From Octopus bimaculoides (Eukaryota): a stretch of DNA of 64,000 nt. Of the stretch, positions 27,853 to 62,570 are shown piece by piece. The position numbers and the translations under genes are program-made. The notes beneath the pieces are model-generated. The model saw only the letters and a program-made list of their open reading frames with translations. It ran no database searches and was not told the origin of the DNA. How positions within the stretch are numbered: the first letter of the stretch is position 1; each line of letters starts with the position of its first letter. The stretch covers positions 42,607,309-42,671,308 of the forward strand of contig NC_068984.1 in NCBI RefSeq assembly GCF_001194135.2, written 5' to 3'.

Positions 27853-28075
27853 AAAGCAGCAAGCTGGCAGAATCGTTGCCAACGCTGGACAAAGTACCTA
27901 GCAGCATTTCTTCCGACTTCACGTTTTGATTTCAAATGCCGACGGAGTCGATTTTGCCTTTCATCTTTTCGGGCCCAATAAAATAGTACTAGTTGGACAC
28001 TGGGATCGATGTAATCGACTTATACCCCTCACCTGAAATTGCTGGTCTTGTGCCAAAATTTAAAACCAATATTTA
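27853..28075 (+). mobile_element. Family-A SINE, full length
   Basis: A-box-like AGCTGGCAGAATCGTT, B-box-like GATTTCAAATGCC, core TTTGCCTTTCATCTTTTCGGG, tail AAATTGCTGGTCTTGTGCCAAAATTT. Confidence 0.9.
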
Positions 28076-28135
28076 ATATGTTTACGTCTGCTACTTTTCC
28101 GCTTGTTAATGTAAAATCTAATTTGTCAATTGCAG

Positions 28136-28205
28136 TTGCCCGGCTGGTTATATCGGTGAACGATGTGAAATGATTGACCATGAATACTAAATATATATCT
28201 GTGAG
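28136..28205 (+). CDS. Host exon encoding the C-terminal part of an EGF-like domain, EGFR-ligand-like (x-CPAGYIGERCEMIDHEY*); coding to 28190
   Basis: Acceptor ...TCTAATTTGTCAATTGCAG| with branch-like CTAAT at 28118-28122 and donor GAG|GTAAGT at 28205/28206. The phase-2 frame gives C-x2-G-Y-x-G-x-R-C-E. The other two frames hit stops without any motif. Confidence 0.7.
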
Positions 28206-28463
28206 GTAAGTAAAAGAAAACACAAAGAACATTTTTATATATTTTCATTAAGTTTTGACTTATCAAATTATAATTAATGAAATACAAAGGATCAAAGTAA
28301 GCGATCCTTTGATTAGTTGTCCTTTAAAACATTCCTGAAACAATCAGTTTCAGTTAGCGTTAGTAATAATAACAATAGATTATTCTACAATAATTCTCAG
28401 AGTGAAGAAACATGCACACAATTTCCGAATTATCATGGCGTCACAAATGGATATAATTATATT

Positions 28464-28464
<1 letters not shown>

Positions 28465-28507
<43 letters not shown>

Positions 28508-28530
28508 TAAATAGATAGATAGATAGATAG
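28465..28530. repeat. (TAGA)/(CAGA)n tetranucleotide microsatellite
   Basis: Direct reading. Confidence 0.9.
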
Positions 28531-29187
28531 ACAAACAGAGAGAGGTGGGAGGAGAAGAATCAGCACGTATCTTTTGCGATTGCACCAGAGCAATTTAATG
28601 TACGGTAAGGAATGTATTGATTAATAAACTGTGTGGAGCAATAGCTAAATCACGTGTCATTGAAACTGATGTTGTCAACAAATTATATACATTGATCAGG
28701 TTAAAAGATAGAAGTAAACTGCGATAAAATTTAAGAAGGGCTTTTGAACAAGAACCCAGAACTCTTAACTGGAAATATTTCAGAGTCAAGTAGTTTCGCA
28801 AGAACTGTAAAGCTGGGAAAATAAACATCGAGAACCTGCATGTGTGGCTTGTTTTCATTTAACTAAGGAAGTCGATTAATTTCACCACATTATTGATGCT
28901 CCTTATTTATATGCGGTTGTGTGATTGTATAAGTAATCATTATGAGAAAACTGGCTTTGAAACAGACTAAATCGTTTACAGTTTGAAAAGAAAACTTTCC
29001 AGTTGAATAATAATGAAGGCTACAATAAAGATAACACGAAAGGAAGTAAACGATACAGCTAACAACCTATTGTTTGACGACTGAAACTAGAATATTTAGA
29101 AAGTAAAGTATGACAAGCGAAACGTGGCACAACTAGACATCTAAATAATAGCATTTTCACTGTATTTTTCATATATTGATTAAACAA

Positions 29188-29372
29188 GAGGGTTACGTTC
29201 CAAAACCCCCACAGAAATAATTAAGATCTAAATAAAATCTAAATACTTATCGGCCGCTGAAACCCACCATATACTGAGGAGTCCACGATATAAATTTACA
29301 TATATTAGCCAGAAAAATCCGCGATGTACTGAGTACGCGATAGGTGAACTGCGATATGGTGAGGGATTATTG
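29188..29372. mobile_element. Tigger/pogo-like non-autonomous DNA transposon remnant
   Basis: The right end read in reverse, CAATAATCCCTCACCATATCGCAGTTCACCTATCGCG..., and GGGTTACGTTCCAAAACCCCC at the left resemble Tigger-type termini (recognised from memory). Confidence 0.45.
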
Positions 29373-30147
29373 CATATAGATTAATAACAAAAGTTCCATC
29401 TTGATCAAACGTGTTATTTATACAGGAGTTGGGGGATACAATGAGCGGTAGCTTGTTTATCTAGAATTAACAATTCAAACTTCTTGAGCTCAAACCCTAA
29501 AACACATTCCATAATGTAGTTCTCGATAAACTAAGTTTGGAAAAAATACGCTGCTATCACGAGAGAAACTCTTTTCATTTAGTTTACAAATCCAAGGTTG
29601 ACCTTAATACCGTTATTACAGTTTGAGGTGTCTTCAAATCAGTTCGAAAAATTTAAGCATTTGTCAATAATTGCTATTGTTGCTGTTGTGTTTAGTCGAA
29701 AGCCAGCTCTGATCGAGTAGAACTCTGATGTAAGGCATTCTAGCCATAACCGTCACGTTTTACTTTATCAGAAAACGTGCATCATGTACTACATAAATTA
29801 TTTTTCCTTAAGACTGTAAAGTATAATTTCAGGTAGATCTGACCGCTTTTCCTACACAGCAGAGCGTCTCCTTATTTCATTTAGAATATACTAGGTGCTT
29901 ACTTAACATATTGTATTATTATGTATTATTATCTTCTTGTGTGATTTGGGTTCTGCAGAAGTTTGTTTTTAATTATATTACTATTTTTCTTATCATAGAA
30001 TTTTCTTTGCATCATGTTATTAACTTCGTGGAGTGGCTAAATAGCATCTTTAATTGTAGCTATTTGTGGTCTAAGGATATATACATACATAATATATACA
30101 TATACATATAACTATATATGCATAAATATATATATATGTATACTTAC

Positions 30148-30192
<45 letters not shown>

Positions 30193-33100
30193 NNNNNNNN
30201 NNNNNNNNNNNNNNNNNNNNNNNNNNNNNNNNNNNNNNNNNNNNNNNNNNNNNNNNNNNNNNNNNNNNNNNNNNNNNNNNNNNNNNNNNNNNNNNNNNNN
30301 NNNNNNNNNNNNNNNNNNNNNNNNNNNNNNNNNNNNNNNNNNNNNNNNNNNNNNNNNNNNNNNNNNNNNNNNNNNNNNNNNNNNNNNNNNNNNNNNNNNN
30401 NNNNNNNNNNNNNNNNNNNNNNNNNNNNNNNNNNNNNNNNNNNNNNNNNNNNNNNNNNNNNNNNNNNNNNNNNNNNNNNNNNNNNNNNNNNNNNNNNNNN
30501 NNNNNNNNNNNNNNNNNNNNNNNNNNNNNNNNNNNNNNNNNNNNNNNNNNNNNNNNNNNNNNNNNNNNNNNNNNNNNNNNNNNNNNNNNNNNNNNNNNNN
30601 NNNNNNNNNNNNNNNNNNNNNNNNNNNNNNNNNNNNNNNNNNNNNNNNNNNNNNNNNNNNNNNNNNNNNNNNNNNNNNNNNNNNNNNNNNNNNNNNNNNN
30701 NNNNNNNNNNNNNNNNNNNNNNNNNNNNNNNNNNNNNNNNNNNNNNNNNNNNNNNNNATATATATATATATATATATATATACAAATACATATAAAGACA
30801 CCACACAACACTCACACGTATATATGTATATGCAACATACCTAAGATAACCGGGACGAAATTTGAATGAAGTTTGGCTACATCTGTGCATATCATAGTTT
30901 TTTGTTTTTTTTTAATCAGAAACAATAGAACTATCGTATATATTTTTATGTTTAGTGTGTAATGTATCTGTGGTAGGAGAATGATTTATAATTTCTGAGG
31001 GACCACACAATGAGTATCAAATGTAAGTCTTGGAATACACTCTCGTAAATCACAATAATTTTTTTCACGGCAATGTGTAAAATTTACGGCCCTTTAATAA
31101 AATTCATTGTGAATACGTATAGGGATTTTCACACTAAGGAATTTATAGAGCATGGAATTAACCGTGTAGTCAAAGGTTCCTATACTTATATCAGCCCTGG
31201 TCATGACTAACATATATTTCACACTGATATTCTGTACGGTTTGCAAATAAACACAGTAGGAGCACTGCATAATTAGCGGCTGTTTTGTAAGCCTGTTTTT
31301 TGTAAGCCTGTTTTTTGCGCTCCTTTTACCATATTAGTTTTAAATTGACATTGTTTATATACAACTCTTTTTTACTATGCTAATCTACTACAGCCTATTA
31401 TTCAATGAAAAAAACAAAATAAGCCCTAAAAATATTGCGACTACGAGATTATAATAAATCCCATAATCGCTTAATGGTGAGGGGGTTATTTTTAATTAAT
31501 AACTCTTTCTTATTTTGGAAATTGACTCTTGTAGTTTGCAGTGAGCGGAAGATGCTTAAAAAACACGCTATATTGCAAGTAGATAAAAAGATGTGATTGA
31601 TTTCTTCTTTAGGTAGACCTTAATGCAAAAGTATAAACCCTACATGTGTGTATGCTTGGATGAAAAGATGGATGGATGGATGGATATGGATGAGATGCTT
31701 TGCTCCATGCGTGAACTGCAAGAGCTACACAGAGGTTTTGTAAGCTGCAAGCTTTTCTAAATCCATAGTAATGTCTGAAACCCTTCCGTATCGTCAGCAG
31801 TTGTCTCAGGATCACATGTATTTCACCCCATAACCTGAACGCTTTGTCTGAGTGGAACAGCGGCGAGGACTGAAATAGTTTTCACCAGCAAGATGGTAGC
31901 ACTTTAAGTGTAATACAGAAAGTTTGTTACTTTATTTACGTTACAATACACTGCAAAACTACAGCAGAATACACTTGGGTGATGGATCAATGGTTTAACT
32001 CAAAATATTTGAGTGCGTGAACGCGTTATCGAGTGTCAATCCCACTGCCGGTTCTCTTTCGAAGATGAAGTATTATATTGAACGAATTTTAGATAGCCTG
32101 TTGTTGTTGTTAATGCTAATAGAGATGACGATGATGGTAGAGGTGGTGGTGCTGGTGGTGGTAGTGCTGGTACTGTTGCTTCAGTTTTCCTTGTTGTTTG
32201 TCATTTGCTCATGGAAGGTTAAACTTATTGTGCGTCCGTCAAATATAGTTTACACAGCACTTACAACATAGAACTCCAAAATATTCAAGTTTCCCATATA
32301 TAAAATAATGAAGGAGTAATATTGCAATTGCTTTTAATTTTCCACCTATTGTTGATAGTATTTGATACCACAATATTATTGACGAAATAAGAACGAGCTC
32401 TAATACCGGTGGTTGTTCTCTTACTAAAAGCGTAATTTATTCATATCCATGTAGGAAAAAAAACTGTCACAAATGACAGTCTTCTGTTGAGGAAGGAAGC
32501 CAGATTAATTATATCTACATGTTACTGGTCATCGGTTATATTCCATGACATTTTCACATTTCATTTGTAACTTAGGATTATTATGATATCGTGTAAATAT
32601 AGGCTTCCTGAAACAGCTGTCGAGTTATGAATTATCATATTTTCTTATGGTATTTTGCACATTTTCTTTGTATTTTTTGTGCTCCAGGTAAATATATTTC
32701 TATGAAGCCTATGTTAANNNNNNNNNNNNNNNNNNNNNNNNNNNNNNNNNNNNNNNNNNNNNNNNNNNNNNNNNNNNNNNNNNNNNNNNNNNNNNNNNNN
32801 NNNNNNNNNNNNNNNNNNNNNNNNNNNNNNNGTATGTGTGTATGTATATATATATATCGATAGAAATACATACATACATAGTTGTTATATGTATAAATAT
32901 AAACATATGTATATGCATATGTAATATAGATATATATGTATATATGTGTTCGTATGTATTCATACTTATATCCCCTACTGTTTGAAAGTTGACAAATTAT
33001 ACATCTTAGCACTAATGCTGAAGACCTGTCTAGTTCTGTATATTTTTAGCACTCTACTGACTCCAGTAGAATTTAAATATTTTACTGTGGAACACCAAAG

Positions 33101-34879
33101 TAGATTTGTGTAAGCATTTAATCCGATTCTATAACTTCCATCAATCACAATTTTTAGCCAATGAATTTCTTGACAAGGAACTATCAAATAATACTTCCAC
33201 TTCTAAAATGAAAGATTGAATACCCTTTTCTTACTGACTTTAAATTATATTCTATTATCAACTGTCTGTTACAAATATAAATTCTCAAGTTTGGGAGGAA
33301 CGTGGCGGAGTCGAGAAACGCGTGTTTTTCTTTTTTAACTGGCTAATCAATAGCTGTAGCTTATATAATTTTCAAACTCTTTCAGAGTGTGTTACATCTT
33401 GTAGGACAGATAAACCACAGAAATACAAATACAGAAAGAAAAGAAAAGAAATATAAACAATAACAGCAATAAAAGTTATATTGTAGTTTTCTTTATATTT
33501 TCTTGTCCTCTATGTCATAACTCTTGTCTATACAAAACACTGCTGTTGAGTGAAAACCAGTTGGCCATATAAACAGTTATTGGGGTTGGTGGGGAAATGA
33601 GGGCGGAGGCATTCTTGGTGGGCTAACACTATAATGATAGTACTTTAACACAAAGAAAATCATCTGTTATCAAAGCGTGAAATAGAACTGGCGCTTACCA
33701 ATGACGTCATAATCTGGTTTGTCAGCGAAATATATATGGCTAAAGCATATGTGACTTCCATTGACTTAGAAATATACTCCTAATAATATGGTTTTGGTCT
33801 CGTCTATGTTCATTTGTTCGACTGCATTTAAAGATATATGAGTTTATATAAGTATACACGTGTGTGTGCGTGTATGTGTATGTGCCTGTATATGTATATG
33901 CATGTGTGTGTGTGTCTGTGCGTATTTGTGTATATATTTAAATGATATATATGTAAATATGTGTATATGTTTATATATGTATTTGTGTATTCAAGGAAAG
34001 TTGGAACAACAATACCAGACCTTTTGTCTAAATCTCTCTGCTTTTCCCTTCTCTTCACTCCCCTCCCTCCCTTCGTATATACATATACATACATACATAC
34101 ATACATACATACATCATACATACACATNNNNNNNNNNNNNNNNNNNNNNNNNNNNNNNNNNNNNNNNNNNNNNNNNNNNNNNNNNNNNNNNNNNNNNNNN
34201 NNNNNNNNNNNNNNNNNNNNNNNNNNNNNNNNNNNNNNNNNNNNNNNNNNNNNNNNNNNNNNNNNNNNNNNNNNNNNNNNNNNNNNNNNNNNNNNNNNNN
34301 NNNNNNNNNNNNNNNNNNNNNNNNNNNNNNNNNNNNNNNNNNNNNNNNNNNNNNNNNNNNNNNNNNNNNNNNNNNNNNNNNNNNNNNNNNNNNNNNNNNN
34401 NCACACACACACACACACACAGAGGCACACACACGCATATACTCTCGCTAACTCACATACATATGCATGCATCGTTTTTCTTATTTTCTCGAAAAATTGA
34501 ATTTAACCAGTCATAAGATCCTGTCTGCATTCGCTCATCGAGGGTAATGGCCACTTGTGCTCCTGAGAGAATTTGTTTTTAATTTCACGCTAGATTCAGC
34601 CACTTTGGCTGAATCACACACACCTGCTATTCTTCGAGTCCACACCAAGCGTGGTTGTATCAAGAGATTGGTAAAAATTCATAGCAGTCTTTGGGATATT
34701 ATAAAATTAGAAGCAAGAGACATAAAATTTAGCAATAACAGCTAAATTTAGCCATTAGGACCTTCTTGCAAATATCCTTCATCATATTCACTTTGGTTGG
34801 TTTACAATATTTAGAAAGGAATTTGACTCAGGGTAAAATGTCATCTAAGAAGATTATATTTATTTTTTTATCGTTTACA

Positions 34880-35072
34880 TCTTTCATTCATTAGAATAGG
34901 GTACAGTCTTGAAAGGTTTCAGTTAAACTAATCGATCCCAGTACTTTTATTTTTGAACCTGGTAAGTATTCTGTCGATACTTATTCTACGGCATTTATTC
35001 TACGCCGAACCGCTACCGCTAAGTTCAAACAAAAAAGCATTGGTTGCTGAGCTGTGGTAGGTAAAAGCATAA

Positions 35073-35136
<64 letters not shown>
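34880..35136 (-). mobile_element. 3' half of a family-B SINE ending in its internal (CA)n tract
   Basis: AATCGATCCCAGTAC, GCCGAACCGCT..AAGTT and AGCATTGGTTG are reverse complements of blocks in 26050-26250. Confidence 0.6.
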
Positions 35137-35137
<1 letters not shown>

Positions 35138-35139
<2 letters not shown>

Positions 35140-36560
35140 TGTAGGCCCTGATAGATTCCCCGACATTCTCCTGAAGGAATGTAGACACCAACTTCCAGTT
35201 CCTCTGACCAACGTCTGGAGAAATTCTTTAGACTCAGGTTATATACNNNNNNNNNNNNNNNNNNNNNNNNNNNNNNNNNNNNNNNNNNNNNNNNNNNNNN
35301 NNNNNNNNNNNNNNNNNNNNNGCTGTAGTCCCTGATAGATTCCCCGACATTCTCCTGAAGGAATGTAGACACCAACTTCCAGTTCCTCTGACCAACGTCT
35401 GGAGAAATTCTTTAGACTCAGGTTATATACCGAAACAGCTCTTAACCCAACCTGTCATTCCGGTTTTCAGACAGTGAAACAGATCCCTCACAGTTAATTG
35501 TCGCCCAATCTCTCGCCTCCCATATCATTAAAGTGCTTGAAAGGGTGGTGAGATCAAGGATAGCTTGCTTCCTGGAGAGCCACAATCCCCTAAATCCACA
35601 CCAACATGGCTGTCGCTACGGCAGAGACTGTCTAACACAGTTCTTACACCACATCGATGATATCCTTAAAGCTTTGGAATGGAATCAGGTTAGAACTCTG
35701 ATGTCATATATCTTGAATTCAGTCAAGCATTCGACAGAGTCCACCATAATATCCTACTGTCAAAATTGGCAAACGTTGGAATTTGTGGAAAACTACTACA
35801 CTGGATGGAGTATTTCCTGGAGATCAGAACACAACATCTTGTGATGCGTGAAATCCACTCAAGCCCAGCAAAATTCCCCACTGGTGTCCCTCAGGTGACT
35901 GTCTTGGGCCTGCTTCTCTTTATAGTCTATATTAACGACCTTTCAAACGTCATAAAACAGAGCAAAGTGAAAATATTCGCTGATGATTCTAAGCTCCAAA
36001 AAATTATAAATGGAGAAGACCGAACTGAATTCCAGTCTGATCTACATTTTGTGAATCACTGGGCAGACAAAAACAAAATGCAACTAAACGAGGGAAAATT
36101 TGCGCTGATGCATTTTGGAAGAAAGACTATGCTAAAACAATCAAACTCTTTTCTTTCATGGGTCCTAAGAACCTTCAGGTACAGAGAACAAGGTGTCAAT
36201 ATTCCTCTGTTCTCCACTTTTCTACGGCCACACCTCGAATACTGCTGCCCCTGTGGTCTCCCCATACAAAACAAAACATTTCGAAAACTGAATCACCTCT
36301 GAGATCATTCACTAAAAGAATAAAGGGCATGACTGATCTCTTTATTTTATTCTCTCCTGTGCCACCGTGAGCGATACATCATTTGGAAGATGTGGAGAAT
36401 ATACCACCCGCATTGCCCAAACGACCTCAACATTAGTTTCAAAATTCATCCAAGGTTATGACCACGGGCCATACGTCCCTACCCTATTCAACGTGTCCCG
36501 AAACAGATCAGAGACGAAAAGGACCCTATTACCTTTAAACGGAATCTGGACAAATTCTTC
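35138..36560 (+). mobile_element. CR1-group LINE reverse transcriptase region, frameshifted with internal deletions
   Basis: GPDRFPDILLKEC; LERVVRSRI..FLE...LNPHQHG; TGVPQVTVLGLLLFIVYINDL; FADDSKL; LRPHLEYC. The 3' part is homologous to 82-945. Confidence 0.92.
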
Positions 36561-37760
36561 AACCAGTGACACAATTATATATAGTGTAGTTAGCTATTAG
36601 TTCAATAGTGACTGACGATGTAAACAGTCACCGACACATTTTGATGTACGTTGAAGTAGCTCGTGGAAAATGTTGCATGCATCTATGCGGTATAGTTGTA
36701 ATCCATCTTTCATTGTTTAATTCGCATAGGTTTAAAGTCATCGTACCAGCTAAATGCTGAGTCGTTGAATACTCTCACTGAATCTTGCTCACATATATAT
36801 GATTATACTCCTAAGATTATATTATAATGTTATATATAAGATTATACTGGCAAGTTTTGTGAGAGAGTACTAATTATGTTATGATTTTATCCTGATGCTT
36901 GACATGAATAAAGATGTGAGCTACTTTGGCTTCTGAGTCCAACACGATGCTAACATTTTTTCTCTGGGTAAAACATATTACGTAAATTTATATTGCTAGT
37001 GGAAAAAGATGTTAAGTCATGTGAAAATATCGTTGGCAGCAGCTGGTGTCTATCTTACGTAAAGTTGCGCTTCAAGCCATGAAACTGGAGTTATCCACAG
37101 GCAATCAAGTCACTTATATATATTTTATACAATTAATTAAGAAAAGATCAGATTTCCATTCTCTCTCCCTCCCTCCCTCTCTCTCTCNNNNNNNNNNNNN
37201 NNNNNNNNNNNNNNNNNNNNNNNNNNNNNNNNNNNNNNNNNNNNNNNNNNNNNNNNNNNNNNNNNNNNNNNNNNNNNNNNNNNNNNNNNNNNNNNNNNNN
37301 NNNNNNNNNNNNNNNNNNNNNNNNNNNNNNNNNNNNNNNNNNNNNNNNNNNNNNNNNNNNNNNNNNNNNNNNNNNNNNNNNNNNNNNNNNNNNNNNNNNN
37401 NNNNNNNNNNNNNNNNNNNNNNNNNNNNNNNNNNNNNNNNNNNNNNNNNNNNNNNNNNNNNNNNNNNNNNNNNNNNNNNNNNNNNNNNNNNNNNNNNNNN
37501 NNNNNNNNNNNNNNNNNNNNNNNNNNNNNNNNNNNNNNNNNNNNNNNNNNNNNNNNNNNNNNNNNNNNNNNNNNNNNNNNNNNNNNNNNNNNNNNNNNNN
37601 NNNNNNNNNNNNNNNNNNNNNNNNNNNNNNNNNNNNNNNNNNNNNNNNNNNNNNNNNNNNNNNNNNNNNNNNNNNNNNNNNNNNNNATATATATTTGTAT
37701 ATATATACGCACATATATATATATATGCATGTATGCATATATGTATATTACACACACATA

Positions 37761-37793
<33 letters not shown>

Positions 37794-52270: not shown

Positions 52271-55200
52271 TAAAGAAATGGAGTTAAGCACAAGTGTCAT
52301 TCATATCTTTATACTTCCGACATATGTTTCGAAGTAAACATTGCGATTATTCTAGACAGAATAAAATGATGTAAAACAATGCGATCTGCTCATCAAGGAG
52401 AAAGAAAAGAGAAACAAAACACACCAATAAGCCATTTTAATCGAATGTGATTACTGTATAGATGATGAAGGGAAAGCTGGTAAGTTATTTAAAAAAAAAA
52501 AACCTAAATAGACTTAACGTCAAAGGAAATTTAAAGAAAGAGAAGGAGGAGAAAGAAACAAATTAGCAGATAACTAAGAGTGGAGAAATATAGTGCGATA
52601 GGTGAATGGGAATACAGCTTAAAGGTGTGGAAATAGATATATTTAGTGAAAAGGAAATGTAAAATGACAGTTAAAAGTCGAATTTTATAGATTGGTAGAA
52701 ATTACTTATAGGAACTAAAGGTATGTTTTTGCCAATGTTTGCAAGGATAAACACGTTCTATAAACGTGTTTACAAGAGAAATCTCTGAGAACAAGATAAG
52801 ATACAATTCTTCGTTACAGAGCGGACAAAATGATTTACCTTTATCATATGGAAAGGACCTAGACAGAATATTCCATTCCAAATCAAATTGTTTATTATAT
52901 ATATATANNNNNNNNNNNNNNNNNNNNNNNNNNNNNNNNNNNNNNNNNNNNNNNNNNNNNNNNNNNNNNNNNNNNNNNNNNNNNNNNNNNNNNNNNNNNN
53001 NNNNNNNNNNNNNNNNNNNNNNNNNNNNNNNNNNNNNNNNNNNNNNNNNNNNNNNNNNNNNNNNNNNNNNNNNNNNNNNNNNNNNNNNNNNNNNNNNNNN
53101 NNNNNNNNNNNNNNNNNNNNNNNNNNNNNNNNNNNNNNNNNNNNNNNNNNNNNNNNNNNNNNNNNNNNNNNNNNNNNNNNNNNNNNNNNNNNNNNNNNNN
53201 NNNNNNNNNNNNNNNNNNNNNNNNNNNNNNNNNNNNNNNNNNNNNNNNNNNNNNNNNNNNNNNNNNNNNNNNNNNNNNNNNNNNNNNNNNNNNNNNNNNN
53301 NNNNNNNNNNNNNNNNNNNNNNNNNNNNNNNNNNNNNNNNNNNNNNNNNNNNNNNNNNNNNNNNNNNNNNNNNNNNNTATATATATATATATATATATTG
53401 CTTGCGTCACAATTTTTTAAAAACGAGAGAACATGTAATACTTTGTATTTTTTATGAAGGTTGAACTCGAACCTATAAATATCTGCATACATGCATATAT
53501 TTATATGTATTTATGCATATATACATAGATGTTTGTATGCATGTGTGTGCACATATATCGTCTATGATATGATTCCTTGCATACATCTAAATATCTAACT
53601 CAATGAATCCTATAAGTCACTCAATTTCTGATGTACTTAGTTCCTGTTAAATATATGTCTCATATCAGACAATGGAAGAAATCTAAACGACAAGGTCGAT
53701 AATTGTTGTTAATTTATATCAGGTGAAGAACATTAAAGCACCATATACATGTGTATGTGTGTGTATGCAAGCATGTATGTGTCTATTTATTATCTATACG
53801 TAGTGTGTCTTGTCTGAACAATTAGACATACGACTACCAATGCTATGTTTAGAGCTCCACGTAGAAGACTTCTGTATTTAATATTACTAGTTATGAAATA
53901 TAGAACAATGTAGATATATATTTAGACCTTTCTTAAAACATGTTAACGTTTCTGCTGTACGCTTCGTACAAATTAACAAAGAGGTTTTTACTACCTGCTT
54001 GAAATAACCAAAACCGTCTCGACACAATACCATTTCGCCGTAACTAAGATTGTTAGGTTCACCTACACCTAAATACATTACGTCAACAAAAATAAAACAT
54101 AAGATCAACGTCGAATACACTTTGATAATTTGTCTTGTGCAGTCAGAGCTCAACTGACCTTGCGCCAGAATGACAAGGAACTAATGCAAACATACACATG
54201 CACGCATACCTCGTATTTTCTGAGTTCTAACTAAACCAGCAAAGCAATTTGATCTGATGTATTTTCTCTTTTATTAAATGTCTTCTATTTTATAAATGAA
54301 AGTAACTGTTTATTGGAATTCGTTTGGTTACAAATAGTTTAATTTGTATATATATATTCTCTTTTCAGACTCATTCAGTTGCCAGTGTTCCAGAAGAAAT
54401 TAATCGCATGTCACGGAACAGTTTTTCTCCTCTTTCCACTCATCTGATTTTATGATGACTTCAGAGTAAAATGACAATATAAAACCACCCCACCGAGAAA
54501 CAAACACAGCTATGAGTTATAGAGAAAACAATATATAAATCAAAAGACCTGTAAAAACAGATCTTTTCTTATATATACATTCATACAAGACTCGAGGTTG
54601 CAGTGGAAAATCGACGTAGAGAGTGTTTGAAAGAGGGGGGAAAACAAATGGGAACACGATGCATGATAGTTAAAAAGAAAATCAATTAAAAGATTAAAAG
54701 CGAAAAAAAATGGAGGAAATGAGCTGAAACAGAAAGGAGAATGTAAAGGAAAACAATACCTCTGCCTTCAACTAAGTCAGCAGAAATAATANNNNNNNNN
54801 NNNNNNNNNNNNNNNNNNNNNNNNNNNNNNNNNNNNNNNNNNNNNNNNNNNNNNNNNNNNNNNNNNNNNNNNNNNNNNNNNNNNNNNNNNNNNNNNNNNN
54901 NNNNNNNNNNNNNNNNNNNNNNNNNNNNNNNNNNNNNNNNNNNNNNNNNNNNNNNNNNNNNNNNNNNNNNNNNNNNNNNNNNNNNNNNNNNNNNNNNNNN
55001 NNNNNNNNNNNNNNNNNNNNNNNNNNNNNNNNNNNNNNNNNNNNNNNNNNNNNNNNNNNNNNNNNNNNNNNNNNNNNNNNNNNNNNNNNNNNNNNNNNNN
55101 NNNNNNNNNNNNNNNNNNNNNNNNNNNNNNNNNNNNNNNNNNNNNNNNNNNNNNNNNNNNNNNNNNNNNNNNNNNNNNNNNNNNNNNNNNNNNNNNNNNN

Positions 55201-57009
55201 NNNNNNNNNNNNNNNNNNNNNNNNNNNNNNNNNNNNNNNNNNNNNNNNNNNNNNNNNNNNNNNNNNNNNNNNNNNNNNNNNNNNNNNNNNNNNNNNNNNN
55301 NNNNNNNNNNNNNNNNNNNNNNNNNNNNNNNNNNNNNNNNNNNNNNNNNNNNNNNNNNNNNNNNNNNNNNNNNNNNNNNNNNNNNNNNNNNNNNNNNNNN
55401 NNNNNNNNNNNNNNNNNNNNNNNNNNNNNNNNNNNNNNNNNNNNNNNNNNNNNNNNNNNNNNNNNNNNNNNNNNNNNNNNNNNNNNNNNNNNNNNNNNNN
55501 NNNNNNNNNNNNNNNNNNNNNNNNNATATATATATATATATTTATATATATATATATATATATATACATATATAAGTGTGAGAGAGAAATTGAGATTGTA
55601 AGAAAGAAAGTGTGGATACGAATGCCTGTGAGATAATTTGTTCGAAACACATCCAGTCGACATCTCCGACTTGATTCGTATTTATAATGTAGTATATTCT
55701 GGTTGATATCTTCCTAGAACTGTACAGATTTTCTTCACCGCTATATTACGAATTTTTATTGAAAGATGATCATATGTATAAAATATTACGCAAAACTAAA
55801 TTAGAGAGACTGTGAACCAGAAAATTTATAACAAAATGGATAACATATGAATCTCTTTGATGTGAAATGACATTAGCACAAAAGAGCGGTAGAGGAAAAT
55901 GGTTTTAGTATAAATAAATAAATAAATAAATAAATAAAATAAAACAAAATACAAAACAAAAAATTTACAAAAAAGAAGGAAAGCAAAAAAGCAGAAATGA
56001 ATATAATAGAAAAATGAGTCGAGAACTATTTGTTATGCACCCTTTTATTGATATTCATATAGACATATATGCGGAAAAATGTATAAAAATACAAACATAC
56101 ACATATAGACACATGCATGAGATATGTGTACTCGCCAACACACACACACAAACGTGCTCATATGAATGTGTANNNNNNNNNNNNNNNNNNNNNNNNNNNN
56201 NNNNNNNNNNNNNNNNNNNNNNNNNNNNNNNNNNNNNNNNNNNNNNNNNNNNNNNNNNNNNNNNNNNNNNNNNNNNNNNNNNNNNNNNNNNNNNNNNNNN
56301 NNNNNNNNNNNNNNNNNNNNNNNNNNNNNNNNNNNNNNNNNNNNNNNNNNNNNNNNNNNNNNNNNNNNNNNNNNNNNNNNNNNNNNNNNNNNNNNNNNNN
56401 NNNNNNNNNNNNNNNNNNNNNNNNNNNNNNNNNNNNNNNNNNNNNNNNNNNNNNNNNNNNNNNNNNNNNNNNNNNNNNNNNNNNNNNNNNNNNNNNNNNN
56501 NNNNNNNNNNNNNNNNNNNNNNNNNNNNNNNNNNNNNNNNNNNNNNNNNNNNNNNNNNNNNNNNNNNNNNNNNNNNNNNNNNNNNNNNNNNNNNNNNNNN
56601 NNNNNNNNNNNNNNNNNNNNNNNNNNNNNNNNNNNNNNNNNNNNNNNNNNNNNNNNNNNNNNNNNNNNNNNNNNNNNNNNNNNNNNNNNNNNNNNNNNNN
56701 NNNNNNNNNNNNNNNNNNNNNNNNNNNNNNNNNNNNNNNNNNNNNNNNNNNNNNNNNNNNNNNNNNNNNNNNNNNNNNNNNNNNNNNNNNNNNNNNNNNN
56801 NNNNNNNNNNNNNNNNNNNNNNNTATATATATATATATGCGTGTGTGAGAGTGTAGGTGTGTATGTGTACGTAATGGTATGTGTATTTTTGTACGTATTT
56901 ATGTCTGTACGATTGTCGTATATTTTATATCTGTTTTCAATAAAAAAAAATTAAAACGTCTGAATATGTTTTTTCTTAATATTGCGTATAATTTATGTTG
57001 AAAATAATT

Positions 57010-60994: not shown

Positions 60995-62570
60995 GGATCC
61001 AGTGGCTAAAGACATCCTCAGGAGGAACCACGTCCGGTTTCGGCCCTTAATCCTTTACGGTCTCTGACGTGGCGCCCCTCCCTCGCTTTCGGAGGTGTCT
61101 TGAGCTCTGGTGTTGAGTGCATTTCTTCTTTCTCCTTCTTTCTTCTGCTCCCTGAACTCTTCGAAGCAGCGCCAACGAGTGTCAGCGGGCGACTGACCAT
61201 CCTTCGCTAGTAGGCTCCAACAGCCAGCACCAGCTAGTTGTCACGTGACGCTGTCTAAACTTCAACTGACCAATGGAAGGGAAGGGCGCGTAATCTTAGC
61301 TCGCGCCTTCTCTAAACCTGCCTTGCAACAGTGTCGTATTAGTTTCAGTTCCAGTAGTCAGAGTAGACTGGCTGCTTGGTGGTACAAGCCTTCGAACAAG
61401 GAGAGGGCACCATGAACGAGACCGCTACCTGTCAACCGGCGGTGCTGCTTGAGTCTCAGCCAATCTCACCTAGCGATGCTATTTCCCAGCCGGCATGATA
61501 TGGCTTTCAAGCCATTTTTGGTCTTCTCGCTTCAGCCATATATAGAAGCTAACTTTTTCGACTGCCTCCTGTATCCTTCTTATTACTTTTCTCAGCTCTG
61601 AGCTCGAAAATACAAACCTTCTTTTGAATAACGTTGTCATTTTCCTTTCAATGAAGCCTCTAACCCCCACTGCTGGGTGGTAATACTCGACAGTCCATCC
61701 CTGTTCTCTGCATTCATCGATTAATTTTTCGTACCTCTTCTCCTTCCATTGCTCTGCATTAGCGATGTTCTCTTCCCATGGCACTGTCAGCTCTAGCAAA
61801 ATTTCAATTCTCCGTTCTGTGTTCCATAGGATTAAGTCTGGTCTTTTTATCGTTTTCATGAGTGTAAATATTAAGTCTTTCCAAATCCGTAGCCAGTTCC
61901 CAGTATCCCTTCCATCTTTCGTCTGTCTCGTATATTTTATTTGAAGGCCTGGTCTTATGTCCTTTTCTCTCCTTCTGGAAGTATATTTTTCTGCGCTTTC
62001 CACTTTTGGGTACTCTCCCCTAATATATCCCTCGATCTTCACCTTGAGTGCTGCGCTTATGACACCGAGCACTTCCTTGTTTAGTGTTAGCCTGCAGTTT
62101 GACAGAACATGCCTCACCGTCGCTTTCTCTCCGCATCTACATTCATCAGTTGTTTGGATGTTCCACCGGACTAAATTCGTCGGTGAAGGTAAAACGTCGA
62201 AAGTAGACTTGATCAGGAAGAATGTTCCCAAGCCTAAACTTCCTTCCAAGAGATTCTGCGACTGACTACATATTCCTCCCATCTCGGGCACTGTCCCTGT
62301 TGACTGCATTGCACCAAATGTACATTTCGCCTTTCTTCTTCCTCCTTTCTCACTTCGTGTACCACTGCCTCTTTCATCTCTTTTTCACTGTTCTTGCAAA
62401 TTGGCCTGAAATTGTGTAACCCTAGACCGGCTCTTGCTTCTTGCGCCGCTCCGACTATATCGGCGTGCCTTAGCTTTCCGATCTCCCTGTTTACTGCCTC
62501 TTCAGCATTCCATTTCCTCCCTGTTCCTTCCTTTATATCACCCCTCCCTGAAAGAAACACTGATTTAAAA
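60995..62570 (-). mobile_element. 5'-truncated RLE-type non-LTR retrotransposon, HERO-like, with long GC-rich 3' UTR
   Basis: Overlapping ORFs 62234-62560 (GRKWNAEEAV, IVG..Q..R.GLG, EVRKEEEERR, QQG..RWE) and 61479-62309 (FLIKSTFDVLPSPTNL, zinc knuckle CRCGEKATVRHVLSNC, RLE RPDLILW..ELTVPWEE, VGVRGF). One frameshift lies between them. Confidence 0.88.

What the first reader, a model, noticed from the sequence alone, without database searches (positions are those of the whole stretch)
28136..28205. Hidden exon of an EGFR-ligand-like EGF domain, missed by the ORF track
Seen: a canonical acceptor (CTAAT branch, TTGCAG) and donor (GAG|GTAAGT) bracket 70 nt reading x-C-P-A-G-Y-I-G-E-R-C-E-M-I-D. 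Known: this is the C5-x8-C6 end of an EGF module. GYIGERC matches human EGF, the Arg before C6 is a receptor-binding residue in ErbB ligands, and those genes have an intron between Cys4 and Cys5, exactly where this exon begins. Inference: the window lies inside a large-intron gene for an EGF/TGF-alpha/neuregulin-like ligand. I could not find the exon encoding Cys1-Cys4, which may be upstream of the window or in a gap.
Basis: partly seen in the sequence, partly recalled or inferred. Interest (0 to 1): 0.75.

Follow-up and report, generated by a model that had tools for sequence, protein, structure and literature searches.

The report
Last coding exon of EGF-like ligand
The 70-base stretch is a real, spliced and conserved exon encoding the final third of an EGF-type growth-factor domain, but it carries its own stop codon, so the product has no membrane anchor after the domain: an ordinary gene exon with one informative twist.

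Summary
Window 28136-28205 is bounded by TTGCAG| and |GTAAGT and reads x-CPAGYIGERCEMIDHEY.

RNA confirms the exon:
- Assembled transcripts from four RNA runs of three coded organisms cover exactly this stretch.
- 17 raw RNA reads lie on it and none on the flanking intron.
- 10 reads join 28205 to 54369, giving a 26,163-nt intron and a non-coding 3' exon.

The mRNA upstream of the exon reads ...YIMVMMERKT-C-x. The intron therefore splits the hinge codon between Cys4 and Cys5, which is the hallmark position in ErbB-ligand genes. That upstream exon is not in the window.

The coding bases and the stop are unchanged in genomic contigs of three other species (C, E, F), whose flanking intron differs by about 6-11%; RNA contigs of a fourth (D) carry the same exon sequence.

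Per module, the fragment is most like EGF, betacellulin and TGF-alpha.

Best reading: this is the last coding exon of an EGF-type ligand-like gene whose product ends 7 residues after Cys6. It would be soluble, like Lymnaea L-EGF or planarian egf-6/7, not membrane-anchored.

Cys1-3, the signal peptide, any upstream domains and receptor binding could not be tested. It is a new member of a known kind, of modest interest.

The parts
28118..28122 (+). CTAAT branch-point-like motif, with its A 14 nt upstream of the acceptor AG
   Evidence: Read directly from the sequence. Its function is inferred from the CTRAY consensus. No differences are listed across 28112-28135 in the contigs of organisms C and E, nor across 28122-28135 in organism F.
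28134..28135 (+). Acceptor AG of the upstream intron. That intron is at least 28 kb unless the upstream exon lies in an assembly gap.
   Evidence: RNA contigs and raw reads stop matching the genome at 28131-28136, and their loose ends carry a different upstream sequence. That sequence is absent from the window.
28136..28205 (+). 70-nt exon: the last coding exon. It starts in phase 2: its first base completes the hinge codon between Cys4 and Cys5.
   Evidence: Covered exactly by RNA contigs of 389-1387 nt in runs X25, X32, X29 and X34. 17 raw RNA reads lie on it, with zero depth in the flanking intron. Fourteen RNA runs of organisms A, C and D hold 0.33 of the sampled words of 28100-28260, which is the share expected if only the exon is present.
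28137..28187 (+). Coding part: CPAGYIGERCEMIDHEY. This is Cys5, the C-loop with G-x-R-C, Cys6, and a 7-residue tail.
   Evidence: Translation. The PDB sequence search matches EGF, betacellulin, TGF-alpha, epigen and epiregulin. BLASTP gives 10/24 identities to human EGF and 10/25 to TGF-alpha. There are no substitutions in organisms C, E or F.
28188..28190 (+). In-frame TAA stop codon, 15 nt before the exon-exon junction
   Evidence: The RNA of organisms A, C and D has the same sequence. No base differences appear in raw RNA reads. It is unchanged in the genomic contigs of C, E and F.
28206..54368 (+). Intron of 26,163 nt as assembled (it contains N gaps), GTAAGT...TTTTCAG
   Evidence: The RNA contigs of X25 and X32 join 28205 to 54369. 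10 raw reads in X43 and X44 show the same joint.
54369..54754 (+). 3' untranslated exon, with its 3' end not reached. The transcript then continues into sequence that the assembly lacks.
   Evidence: The X25 contig runs 54369-54710 with no differences. Raw reads cover the region to 54754 and then carry loose ends GTGACAAAAAAA.... That continuation is not found in the window.

Best explanation
Window 28136-28205 is the last coding exon of a protein-coding gene on the + strand. The gene has very large introns and its product carries an EGF module of the growth-factor (EGFR/ErbB-ligand) type.

The exon supplies the third base of the hinge codon, then Cys5, the C-loop (P-A-G-Y-I-G-E-R), Cys6, a 7-residue tail (E-M-I-D-H-E-Y) and the stop. 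It is spliced to a non-coding 3' exon 26 kb downstream.

Shown: the exon boundaries, the splicing to 54369, the stop, the upstream mRNA reading ...YIMVMMERKT-C-x, and purifying selection on the coding bases.

Inferred: the module folds with the usual C1-C3, C2-C4 and C5-C6 disulfides. The protein is secreted through an N-terminal signal peptide. Because it ends 7 residues after Cys6, with no stalk or transmembrane segment, it is released as a diffusible factor without shedding by a protease. It would then act on the animal's EGF receptor, with the Arg before Cys6 as a contact residue, in the manner of the soluble molluscan L-EGF.
For: 1. Splicing. RNA contigs of 1387, 389, 921 and 1019 nt, from four runs of three organisms, match 28131/28136-28205 only. 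All carry the same upstream loose end, TACATTATGGTGATGATGGAACGAAAAACA, and the same downstream one, ACTCATTCAGTTGCCAGTGTTCCAGAAGAA. The downstream loose end is window 54369-54398, which sits behind a ttttcag acceptor. Raw reads: 17 lie on the exon, 0 on the flanking intron, and 10 cross 28205>54369. Depth at the start of the 3' exon is about 12 reads, which is about the number spliced from 28205.

2. Frame. Only the EGF frame stays open through the upstream 35 nt. It reads YIMVMMERKT-C-x-CPAGYIGERCEMIDHEY*.

3. Family signature. The visible part fits X(>=10)-C-X-C-X5-G-X-R-C of the ligand consensus CX7CX4-5CX10-13CXCX8C / ...CXCX5GXRC. A splice site between Cys4 and Cys5 and the Arg before Cys6 are the features Stein & Staros use to tell ligands from other EGF modules.

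4. Similarity. The best single-module PDB matches are EGF (22.9 bits, query 5-26), an EGF-mimicking ant toxin, betacellulin and TGF-alpha. No single Notch module exceeds 11.3 bits.

5. Constraint. No substitutions appear in 28112-28219 in organisms C and E, against 14 substitutions and 2 indels in the next 241 nt. In organism F the only exon change is 28199, after the stop, against 6 substitutions and an indel in the next 56 nt.

6. [quoted passage not shown]
Against: - Cys1-Cys3, the signal peptide and everything else in the 970 nt that precede the exon in the X25 contig could not be read. A single-module, secreted architecture is therefore assumed, not shown.
- The Cys4 codon rests on a 5-nt overhang (genomic TGCAG) that the aligner extended with one mismatch. 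Cys is very likely, but the hinge residue is unresolved.
- The second Stein & Staros criterion, an EGF module next to a transmembrane domain, is not met.
- The position aligned with EGF Leu47, important for EGFR binding in mammals (my own knowledge), is His here.
- The C-terminal half of an EGF module is generic. Jagged-1 (21 bits) and factor IX (18.9 bits) also match, and the Pfam EGF models score below their cut-offs on this short fragment.
- No receptor data exist.
- RNA depth is low (17 reads), so a minor isoform with another C-terminal exon cannot be excluded.
Confidence: 0.66

Rival explanations
1. The gene is a neuregulin/Vein-type ligand. An immunoglobulin domain or other N-terminal domains precede the EGF module, and the protein is secreted without a membrane anchor, as Drosophila Vein is.
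For: The X25 transcript contig has 970 nt upstream of the exon, room for about 300 residues. Vein keeps the Cys4/Cys5 splice site in all species examined. [quoted passage not shown] That Vein is secreted with its EGF module near the C-terminus is my own knowledge.
Against: The visible fragment scores 13 bits against NRG1 EGF domains, versus 21-23 bits against EGF, betacellulin and TGF-alpha. Part of the 970 nt may be 5' UTR. No Ig-coding exon was seen, though none could have been, because the upstream exons lie outside the window.
Confidence: 0.15
2. The module belongs to a non-ligand protein that ends in an EGF module and does not signal through an EGF receptor. Examples would be a mucin-, meprin- or IMPG2-like protein, or a matrix or Notch-ligand-like protein.
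For: The second half of EGF modules is generic. Notch, Jagged-1, factor IX and a mussel foot protein match at similar E-values, and Pfam gives only sub-threshold generic EGF hits. Mucins 3/4/12/17, meprins and IMPG2 also have the Cys4/Cys5 splice site.
Against: At least 10 residues without Cys precede Cys4. This fits the ligand spacing of 10-13 and not the shorter loop of about 8 residues in Notch-type repeats (my own knowledge). G-x-R-C is present. The match to EGF, TGF-alpha and betacellulin extends into the B-loop (query 3-27), whereas Notch modules match only query 9-27 at no more than 11.3 bits each. The mucin and meprin modules sit next to a TM segment, which is absent here.
Confidence: 0.14
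3. The exon is an alternative, stop-carrying cassette giving a truncated or regulatory isoform. The main isoform would use another Cys5-Cys6 exon plus stalk and transmembrane exons outside the window or in a gap, as in the alternative EGF-domain and stop-containing exons of vertebrate NRG1.
For: The window has 13 N gaps (5153 N) and ends 10 kb past the 3' exon, so other exons could be hidden. RNA depth is low. The NRG1 precedent is my own knowledge.
Against: This form is the one assembled in all four RNA runs of three organisms. Depth at the start of the 3' exon (about 12 reads) roughly matches the number of reads spliced from 28205; the upstream loose ends of those reads were not displayed. 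No second Cys5-Cys6 motif exists in any frame of the window. The coding bases and the stop are conserved across species. The stop lies 15 nt from the last junction, which by the usual 50-55 nt rule does not trigger nonsense-mediated decay (my own knowledge).
Confidence: 0.05

Closest known systems
Vertebrate EGFR ligands of the EGF type (EGF, TGF-alpha, betacellulin)
   Same: The C-X-C-X5-G-X-R-C end of the module matches, with GYIGERC identical to human EGF. Identities are 10/24 to EGF and 10/25 to TGF-alpha, and they extend into the B-loop. The intron lies between Cys4 and Cys5.
   Different: Those ligands are made as membrane-anchored precursors with the module next to a transmembrane segment. 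This product stops 7 residues after Cys6. The Leu47-equivalent position is His.
Lymnaea stagnalis L-EGF (Hermann et al. 2000, as cited in PMC4210270)
   Same: The stop codon here implies the same architecture.
   Different: Orthology was not tested. The original paper is not held and I had no L-EGF sequence. The organism of this window is not disclosed.
[quoted passage not shown]
   Same: These are EGF-type ligands of a spiralian without a transmembrane domain.
   Different: No sequence comparison was made. EGF-domain phylogenies carry little signal.
Drosophila Vein / neuregulin-type ligands
   Same: They have the Cys4/Cys5 splice site. Vein is secreted without an anchor (my own knowledge).
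   Different: They need an Ig domain upstream, which could not be examined. The fragment scores lower against NRG1 modules, 13 bits versus 22.9 for EGF.

Membership tests
EGF-family (EGFR/ErbB) ligands | Six-cysteine module with spacing CX7CX4-5CX10-13CXCX8C (PMC8943033) | tested here: inconclusive
   Seen: at least 10 Cys-free residues, then Cys4 (inferred from a 5-nt overhang with one mismatch), X, Cys5, X8, Cys6. Cys1-Cys3 lie on an exon outside the window and could not be read.
EGF-family (EGFR/ErbB) ligands | G-X-R-C: conserved Gly and Arg before Cys6 (PMC8725985; PMC1618406) | tested here: met
   G-E-R-C at 28155-28166.
EGF-family (EGFR/ErbB) ligands | [quoted passage not shown] | tested here: met
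   RNA contigs and reads place the junction one base before the Cys5 codon. The upstream mRNA ends ...AAA ACA TGC-like + 2 nt.
EGF-family (EGFR/ErbB) ligands | EGF module placed next to a transmembrane domain (Stein & Staros 2006) | tested here: not met
   TAA lies 7 codons after Cys6. The only downstream exon seen is non-coding. Soluble exceptions are accepted as ligands elsewhere.
EGF-family (EGFR/ErbB) ligands | Single EGF module, signal peptide and coherent full-length architecture (criteria of Barberan et al. 2016) | not testable with these tools
   The upstream 970 nt of the transcript exist, but only 30 nt of them are shown. Protein and metagenome searches found nothing.
EGF-family (EGFR/ErbB) ligands | Binds and activates an EGF receptor | not testable with these tools
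   This needs an experiment.
Soluble molluscan EGF (L-EGF type) | No transmembrane domain; released as a free peptide | tested here: met
   The stop falls inside the exon and the 3' exon is untranslated. L-EGF is described as secreted.
Soluble molluscan EGF (L-EGF type) | Sequence orthology to L-EGF | not tested
   No L-EGF sequence was available.
Neuregulin/Vein-type ligands | Immunoglobulin domain N-terminal to the EGF module | not testable with these tools
   The upstream exons lie outside the window.
Notch/Delta-type tandem EGF repeats (non-ligand modules) | Short Cys3-Cys4 loop (about 8 residues) and introns at module borders, not between Cys4 and Cys5 | tested here: not met
   At least 10 Cys-free residues precede Cys4, and the intron lies between Cys4 and Cys5. 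Single Notch modules score no more than 11.3 bits, versus 22.9 for EGF. The Notch loop length is my own knowledge.

The most novel reading that the evidence does not exclude
In this lineage a freely diffusible EGF-type hormone is encoded by a gene in which the stop codon follows the EGF module directly. It has no anchor and needs no shedding. It is conserved base for base among several related species and acts at a distance, as a circulating or neurotrophic factor like Lymnaea L-EGF, or as a secreted EGF mimic. That would make anchor-less EGF signalling a conserved molluscan trait, not a peculiarity of one snail.
Probability: 0.4. Interest if true: 0.4.

Novelty: new member of a known kind. 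Interest (0 to 1): 0.3.

Why it matters
This is a correct call of a 70-nt exon that ORF scanning cannot see; the stop-to-stop frame is only 22 codons. It places a probable EGF-receptor ligand gene in this genome and shows that the gene spans more than 54 kb of mostly repeat-filled intron.

The biologically useful point is the stop codon. The product lacks the membrane anchor typical of the well-studied (vertebrate, Spitz-type) EGFR ligands, so it should not depend on ADAM- or rhomboid-type shedding. It is a candidate diffusible growth or neurotrophic factor of the kind known from Lymnaea. This is easy to test once the full cDNA is read. It extends known biology and does not overturn anything.

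Tried and rejected
- Protein database search with the 29-residue peptide. A tandem duplicate of the peptide found no candidate sharing enough 5-residue words. Human EGF, which shares GYIGERC, did not appear either, so this says little about absence.
- Exact-pattern scan of the metagenome contigs with 34 nt of the exon: no match.
- Search of the window for the upstream exon (30 nt of mRNA, up to 3 mismatches, both strands): absent.
- Six-frame scan for a Cys1-Cys4 exon or a second Cys5-Cys6 exon: only low-complexity false positives.
- Full-text search for the peptide string: no paper. The original L-EGF paper is not held.
- Rfam on the whole window: nothing.
- One read-laying run was lost to a filter.
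- Rejected: a chance motif (RNA and conservation rule it out).
- Rejected: stop read-through or editing. No base differences appear in RNA reads, and the read-through frame gives only about 30 further residues, with no cysteine pattern or hydrophobic segment.
- Rejected: exon skipping as the productive form. Joining the upstream exon directly to 54369 gives a 26-codon tail without Cys5 or Cys6.
- I did not hand invented or mRNA-derived letters to read laying in order to walk upstream, because the tool is restricted to window or locus sequence.

Full report
**Observation**

- A CTAAT motif lies at 28118-28122 and the acceptor ttgcag ends at 28135.
- The segment 28136-28205 is 70 nt long.
- The donor GAG|GTAAGT lies at 28205/28206.

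Read from its second base, the segment gives CPAGYIGERCEMIDHEY. The frame therefore closes inside the exon, 15 nt before the donor.

The stop-to-stop frame in genomic DNA is only 22 codons. This is why no ORF list shows it.

The motif C..G[FYW].G.RC occurs once in the six frames of the window. It occurred in none of 300 Markov simulations.

**RNA evidence**

Fourteen RNA runs of three coded organisms (A, C, D) hold 0.33 of the sampled 31-mers of 28100-28260. That is the share expected if only the 70-nt exon is transcribed.

Assembled RNA contigs were laid on the window: 1387 and 389 nt from organism A, 921 nt from C and 1019 nt from D.
- They match 28131/28136-28205 and nothing around it.
- All four continue upstream with TACATTATGGTGATGATGGAACGAAAAACA.
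- All four continue downstream with ACTCATTCAGTTGCCAGTGTTCCAGAAGAA.

The downstream letters are window 54369-54398, directly behind a tctcttttcag acceptor. The organism-A contigs run on from there without a difference to 54710.

Raw reads of three 2026 RNA runs, about 6% of each sampled, give the same picture:
- 17 reads lie on the exon.
- Depth is zero in the 50 nt before it and the 125 nt after it.
- 10 reads cross from 28205 into the 54369 exon.

Depth at the start of the 3' exon is about 12 reads. This roughly matches the number of reads spliced from 28205; the upstream loose ends of those reads were not displayed. So there is no sign of another major partner.

The intron 28206-54368 is 26,163 nt as assembled.

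**Reading frame and upstream exon**

Only one frame stays open across the upstream 30 nt, the 5-nt overhang and the exon. It reads Y-I-M-V-M-M-E-R-K-T-C-x-C-P-A-G-Y-I-G-E-R-C-E-M-I-D-H-E-Y-stop.

The two residues before Cys5 rest on five bases where the mRNA resembles the intron end (TGCAG) with one mismatch.
- An aligner would not extend over a mismatch unless matches lie beyond it.
- The mismatch is therefore most likely in the last two or three of the five bases.
- That leaves a Cys codon (TGC or TGT) for Cys4 and an unresolved hinge residue.
- This step is inference.

The intron falls after the second base of the hinge codon, i.e. between Cys4 and Cys5.

The upstream exon is not in the window on either strand. 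No Cys1-Cys4-like exon or second Cys5-Cys6 exon is present. The upstream exon lies either more than 28 kb upstream or in the 330-N gap at 19493-19822.

**Conservation**

Genomic contigs of organisms C and E cover 28050-28460.
- They show no difference in 28112-28219.
- They show 14 substitutions and two indels in 28220-28460, plus two substitutions upstream.

Organism F is more diverged.
- Its only change inside the exon is 28199 C>T, in the 15 nt after the stop.
- The next 56 nt of intron carry six substitutions and a 2-nt deletion.
- At the intronic rate of about 11%, roughly six changes would be expected in the 55 coding bases. None is seen.

The coding bases and the stop codon are therefore under constraint.

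**What it encodes**

The visible part fits X(>=10)-C-X-C-X5-G-X-R-C. This is the second half of the EGF-ligand consensus CX7CX4-5CX10-13CXCX8C / CX7CX3-5CX10-12CXCX5GXRC.

Against all PDB sequences, the best single-module matches are:

| Match | Bits | Query residues |
|---|---|---|
| Human EGF | 22.9 | 5-26 |
| EGF-mimicking ant toxin | 22.6 | 6-27 |
| Betacellulin | 21.6 | 4-27 |
| TGF-alpha | 20.8 | 3-26 |

Epigen and epiregulin follow. Notch fragments rank first only by summing three modules of at most 11.3 bits each. Jagged-1 and factor IX also match, and NRG1 scores 13 bits.

Pfam returns only generic EGF models below their cut-offs, as expected for half a module.

Stein & Staros (PMC1618406) characterise ErbB ligands by two criteria:
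- A splice site between Cys4 and Cys5. This is met here.
- Placement of the module next to a transmembrane domain. This is not met, because the protein ends 7 residues after Cys6 and the following exon is untranslated.

They also note a conserved Arg before Cys6, which is present here.

**Mechanism proposed**

The gene most likely encodes an EGF-type ligand that is secreted without a membrane anchor. The exon provides the C-loop and C-terminal tail. The Cys5-Cys6 disulfide and the Arg before Cys6 would form the receptor-contacting C-terminal subdomain. With no stalk or anchor, release would not require a sheddase.

Precedents exist:
- EGF-type ligands with zero transmembrane regions, such as planarian egf-6/7, are catalogued (PMC4914847).

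The stop lies 15 nt from the last exon junction. By the usual rule this does not trigger nonsense-mediated decay (my own knowledge).

Weak points:
- The position aligned with EGF Leu47 is His.
- The 970 nt of mRNA upstream of the exon in the X25 contig could hold further domains, such as an Ig domain as in Vein/NRG-type ligands.
- Cys1-Cys3 and a signal peptide were not seen.

**Rivals**

- A Vein/NRG-type architecture (0.15).
- A non-ligand protein ending in an EGF module (0.14).
- A minor stop-carrying isoform of an anchored ligand (0.05).

All three are decided by reading the full transcript and by long-read cDNA. Chance is excluded by the RNA and conservation data.

**Limits**

- The tools show only 30 nt of loose ends and accept only window or locus sequence, so I could not walk along the transcript.
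- The protein collection and the metagenome contigs gave nothing.
- No paper holds the peptide string.
- The organism is coded.

**Verdict**

This is a real, correctly delimited exon of an EGF-ligand-like gene. It is a new member of a known kind, of modest interest.

Noticed in passing
window 27917-28075: A very high-copy SINE-like repeat ends about 60 nt upstream of the exon. Word depth in genomic contigs of four organisms reaches 0.25-2.5 million, and the repeat is also abundant in RNA contigs. Many contigs break or rearrange inside it. Rfam gives no family for it.
   Followed up: partly
window 28466-28531: A (GATA)n/(GACA)n microsatellite lies 260 nt downstream of the exon. It draws very high depth from RNA contigs of all runs; this is repeat cross-mapping, not expression of this locus.
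   Followed up: no
window 35533-36302 (+) and 254-919 (-): These are fragments of one non-LTR retrotransposon family in opposite orientations. ORF 35766-36302 matches Pfam RVT_1 (E 1.9e-6, just under the cut-off). The ORFs at 254-919 share its MHFGRKT.LKQ / LRTFR.REQGV / RPHLEY motifs.
   Followed up: partly
window 61479-62560 (-): The longest uninterrupted ORF of the window (276 aa), plus an overlapping 108-aa ORF, has no Pfam match. It may be a transposon-derived ORF. It sits in the most GC-rich part of the window (0.38-0.41).
   Followed up: partly
window 54754-54791: RNA reads of two runs leave the assembly at 54754/54755 and continue GTGACAAAAAAAAAAAAAAAAATGAAGCAA, which is nowhere in the window. 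The 37 nt between this point and the N gap (54792-55525) are not what follows in the transcript. The cause is either a mis-joined gap edge or an indel.
   Followed up: partly
window, 13 N gaps (e.g. 19493-19822, 30193-30757, 38861-39679): Most of the assembly gaps are flanked by (TA)n or (TATA)-type repeats (IYIYIY in translation). The gaps therefore mark collapsed AT microsatellites. In total 5153 of the 64000 bases are N.
   Followed up: no
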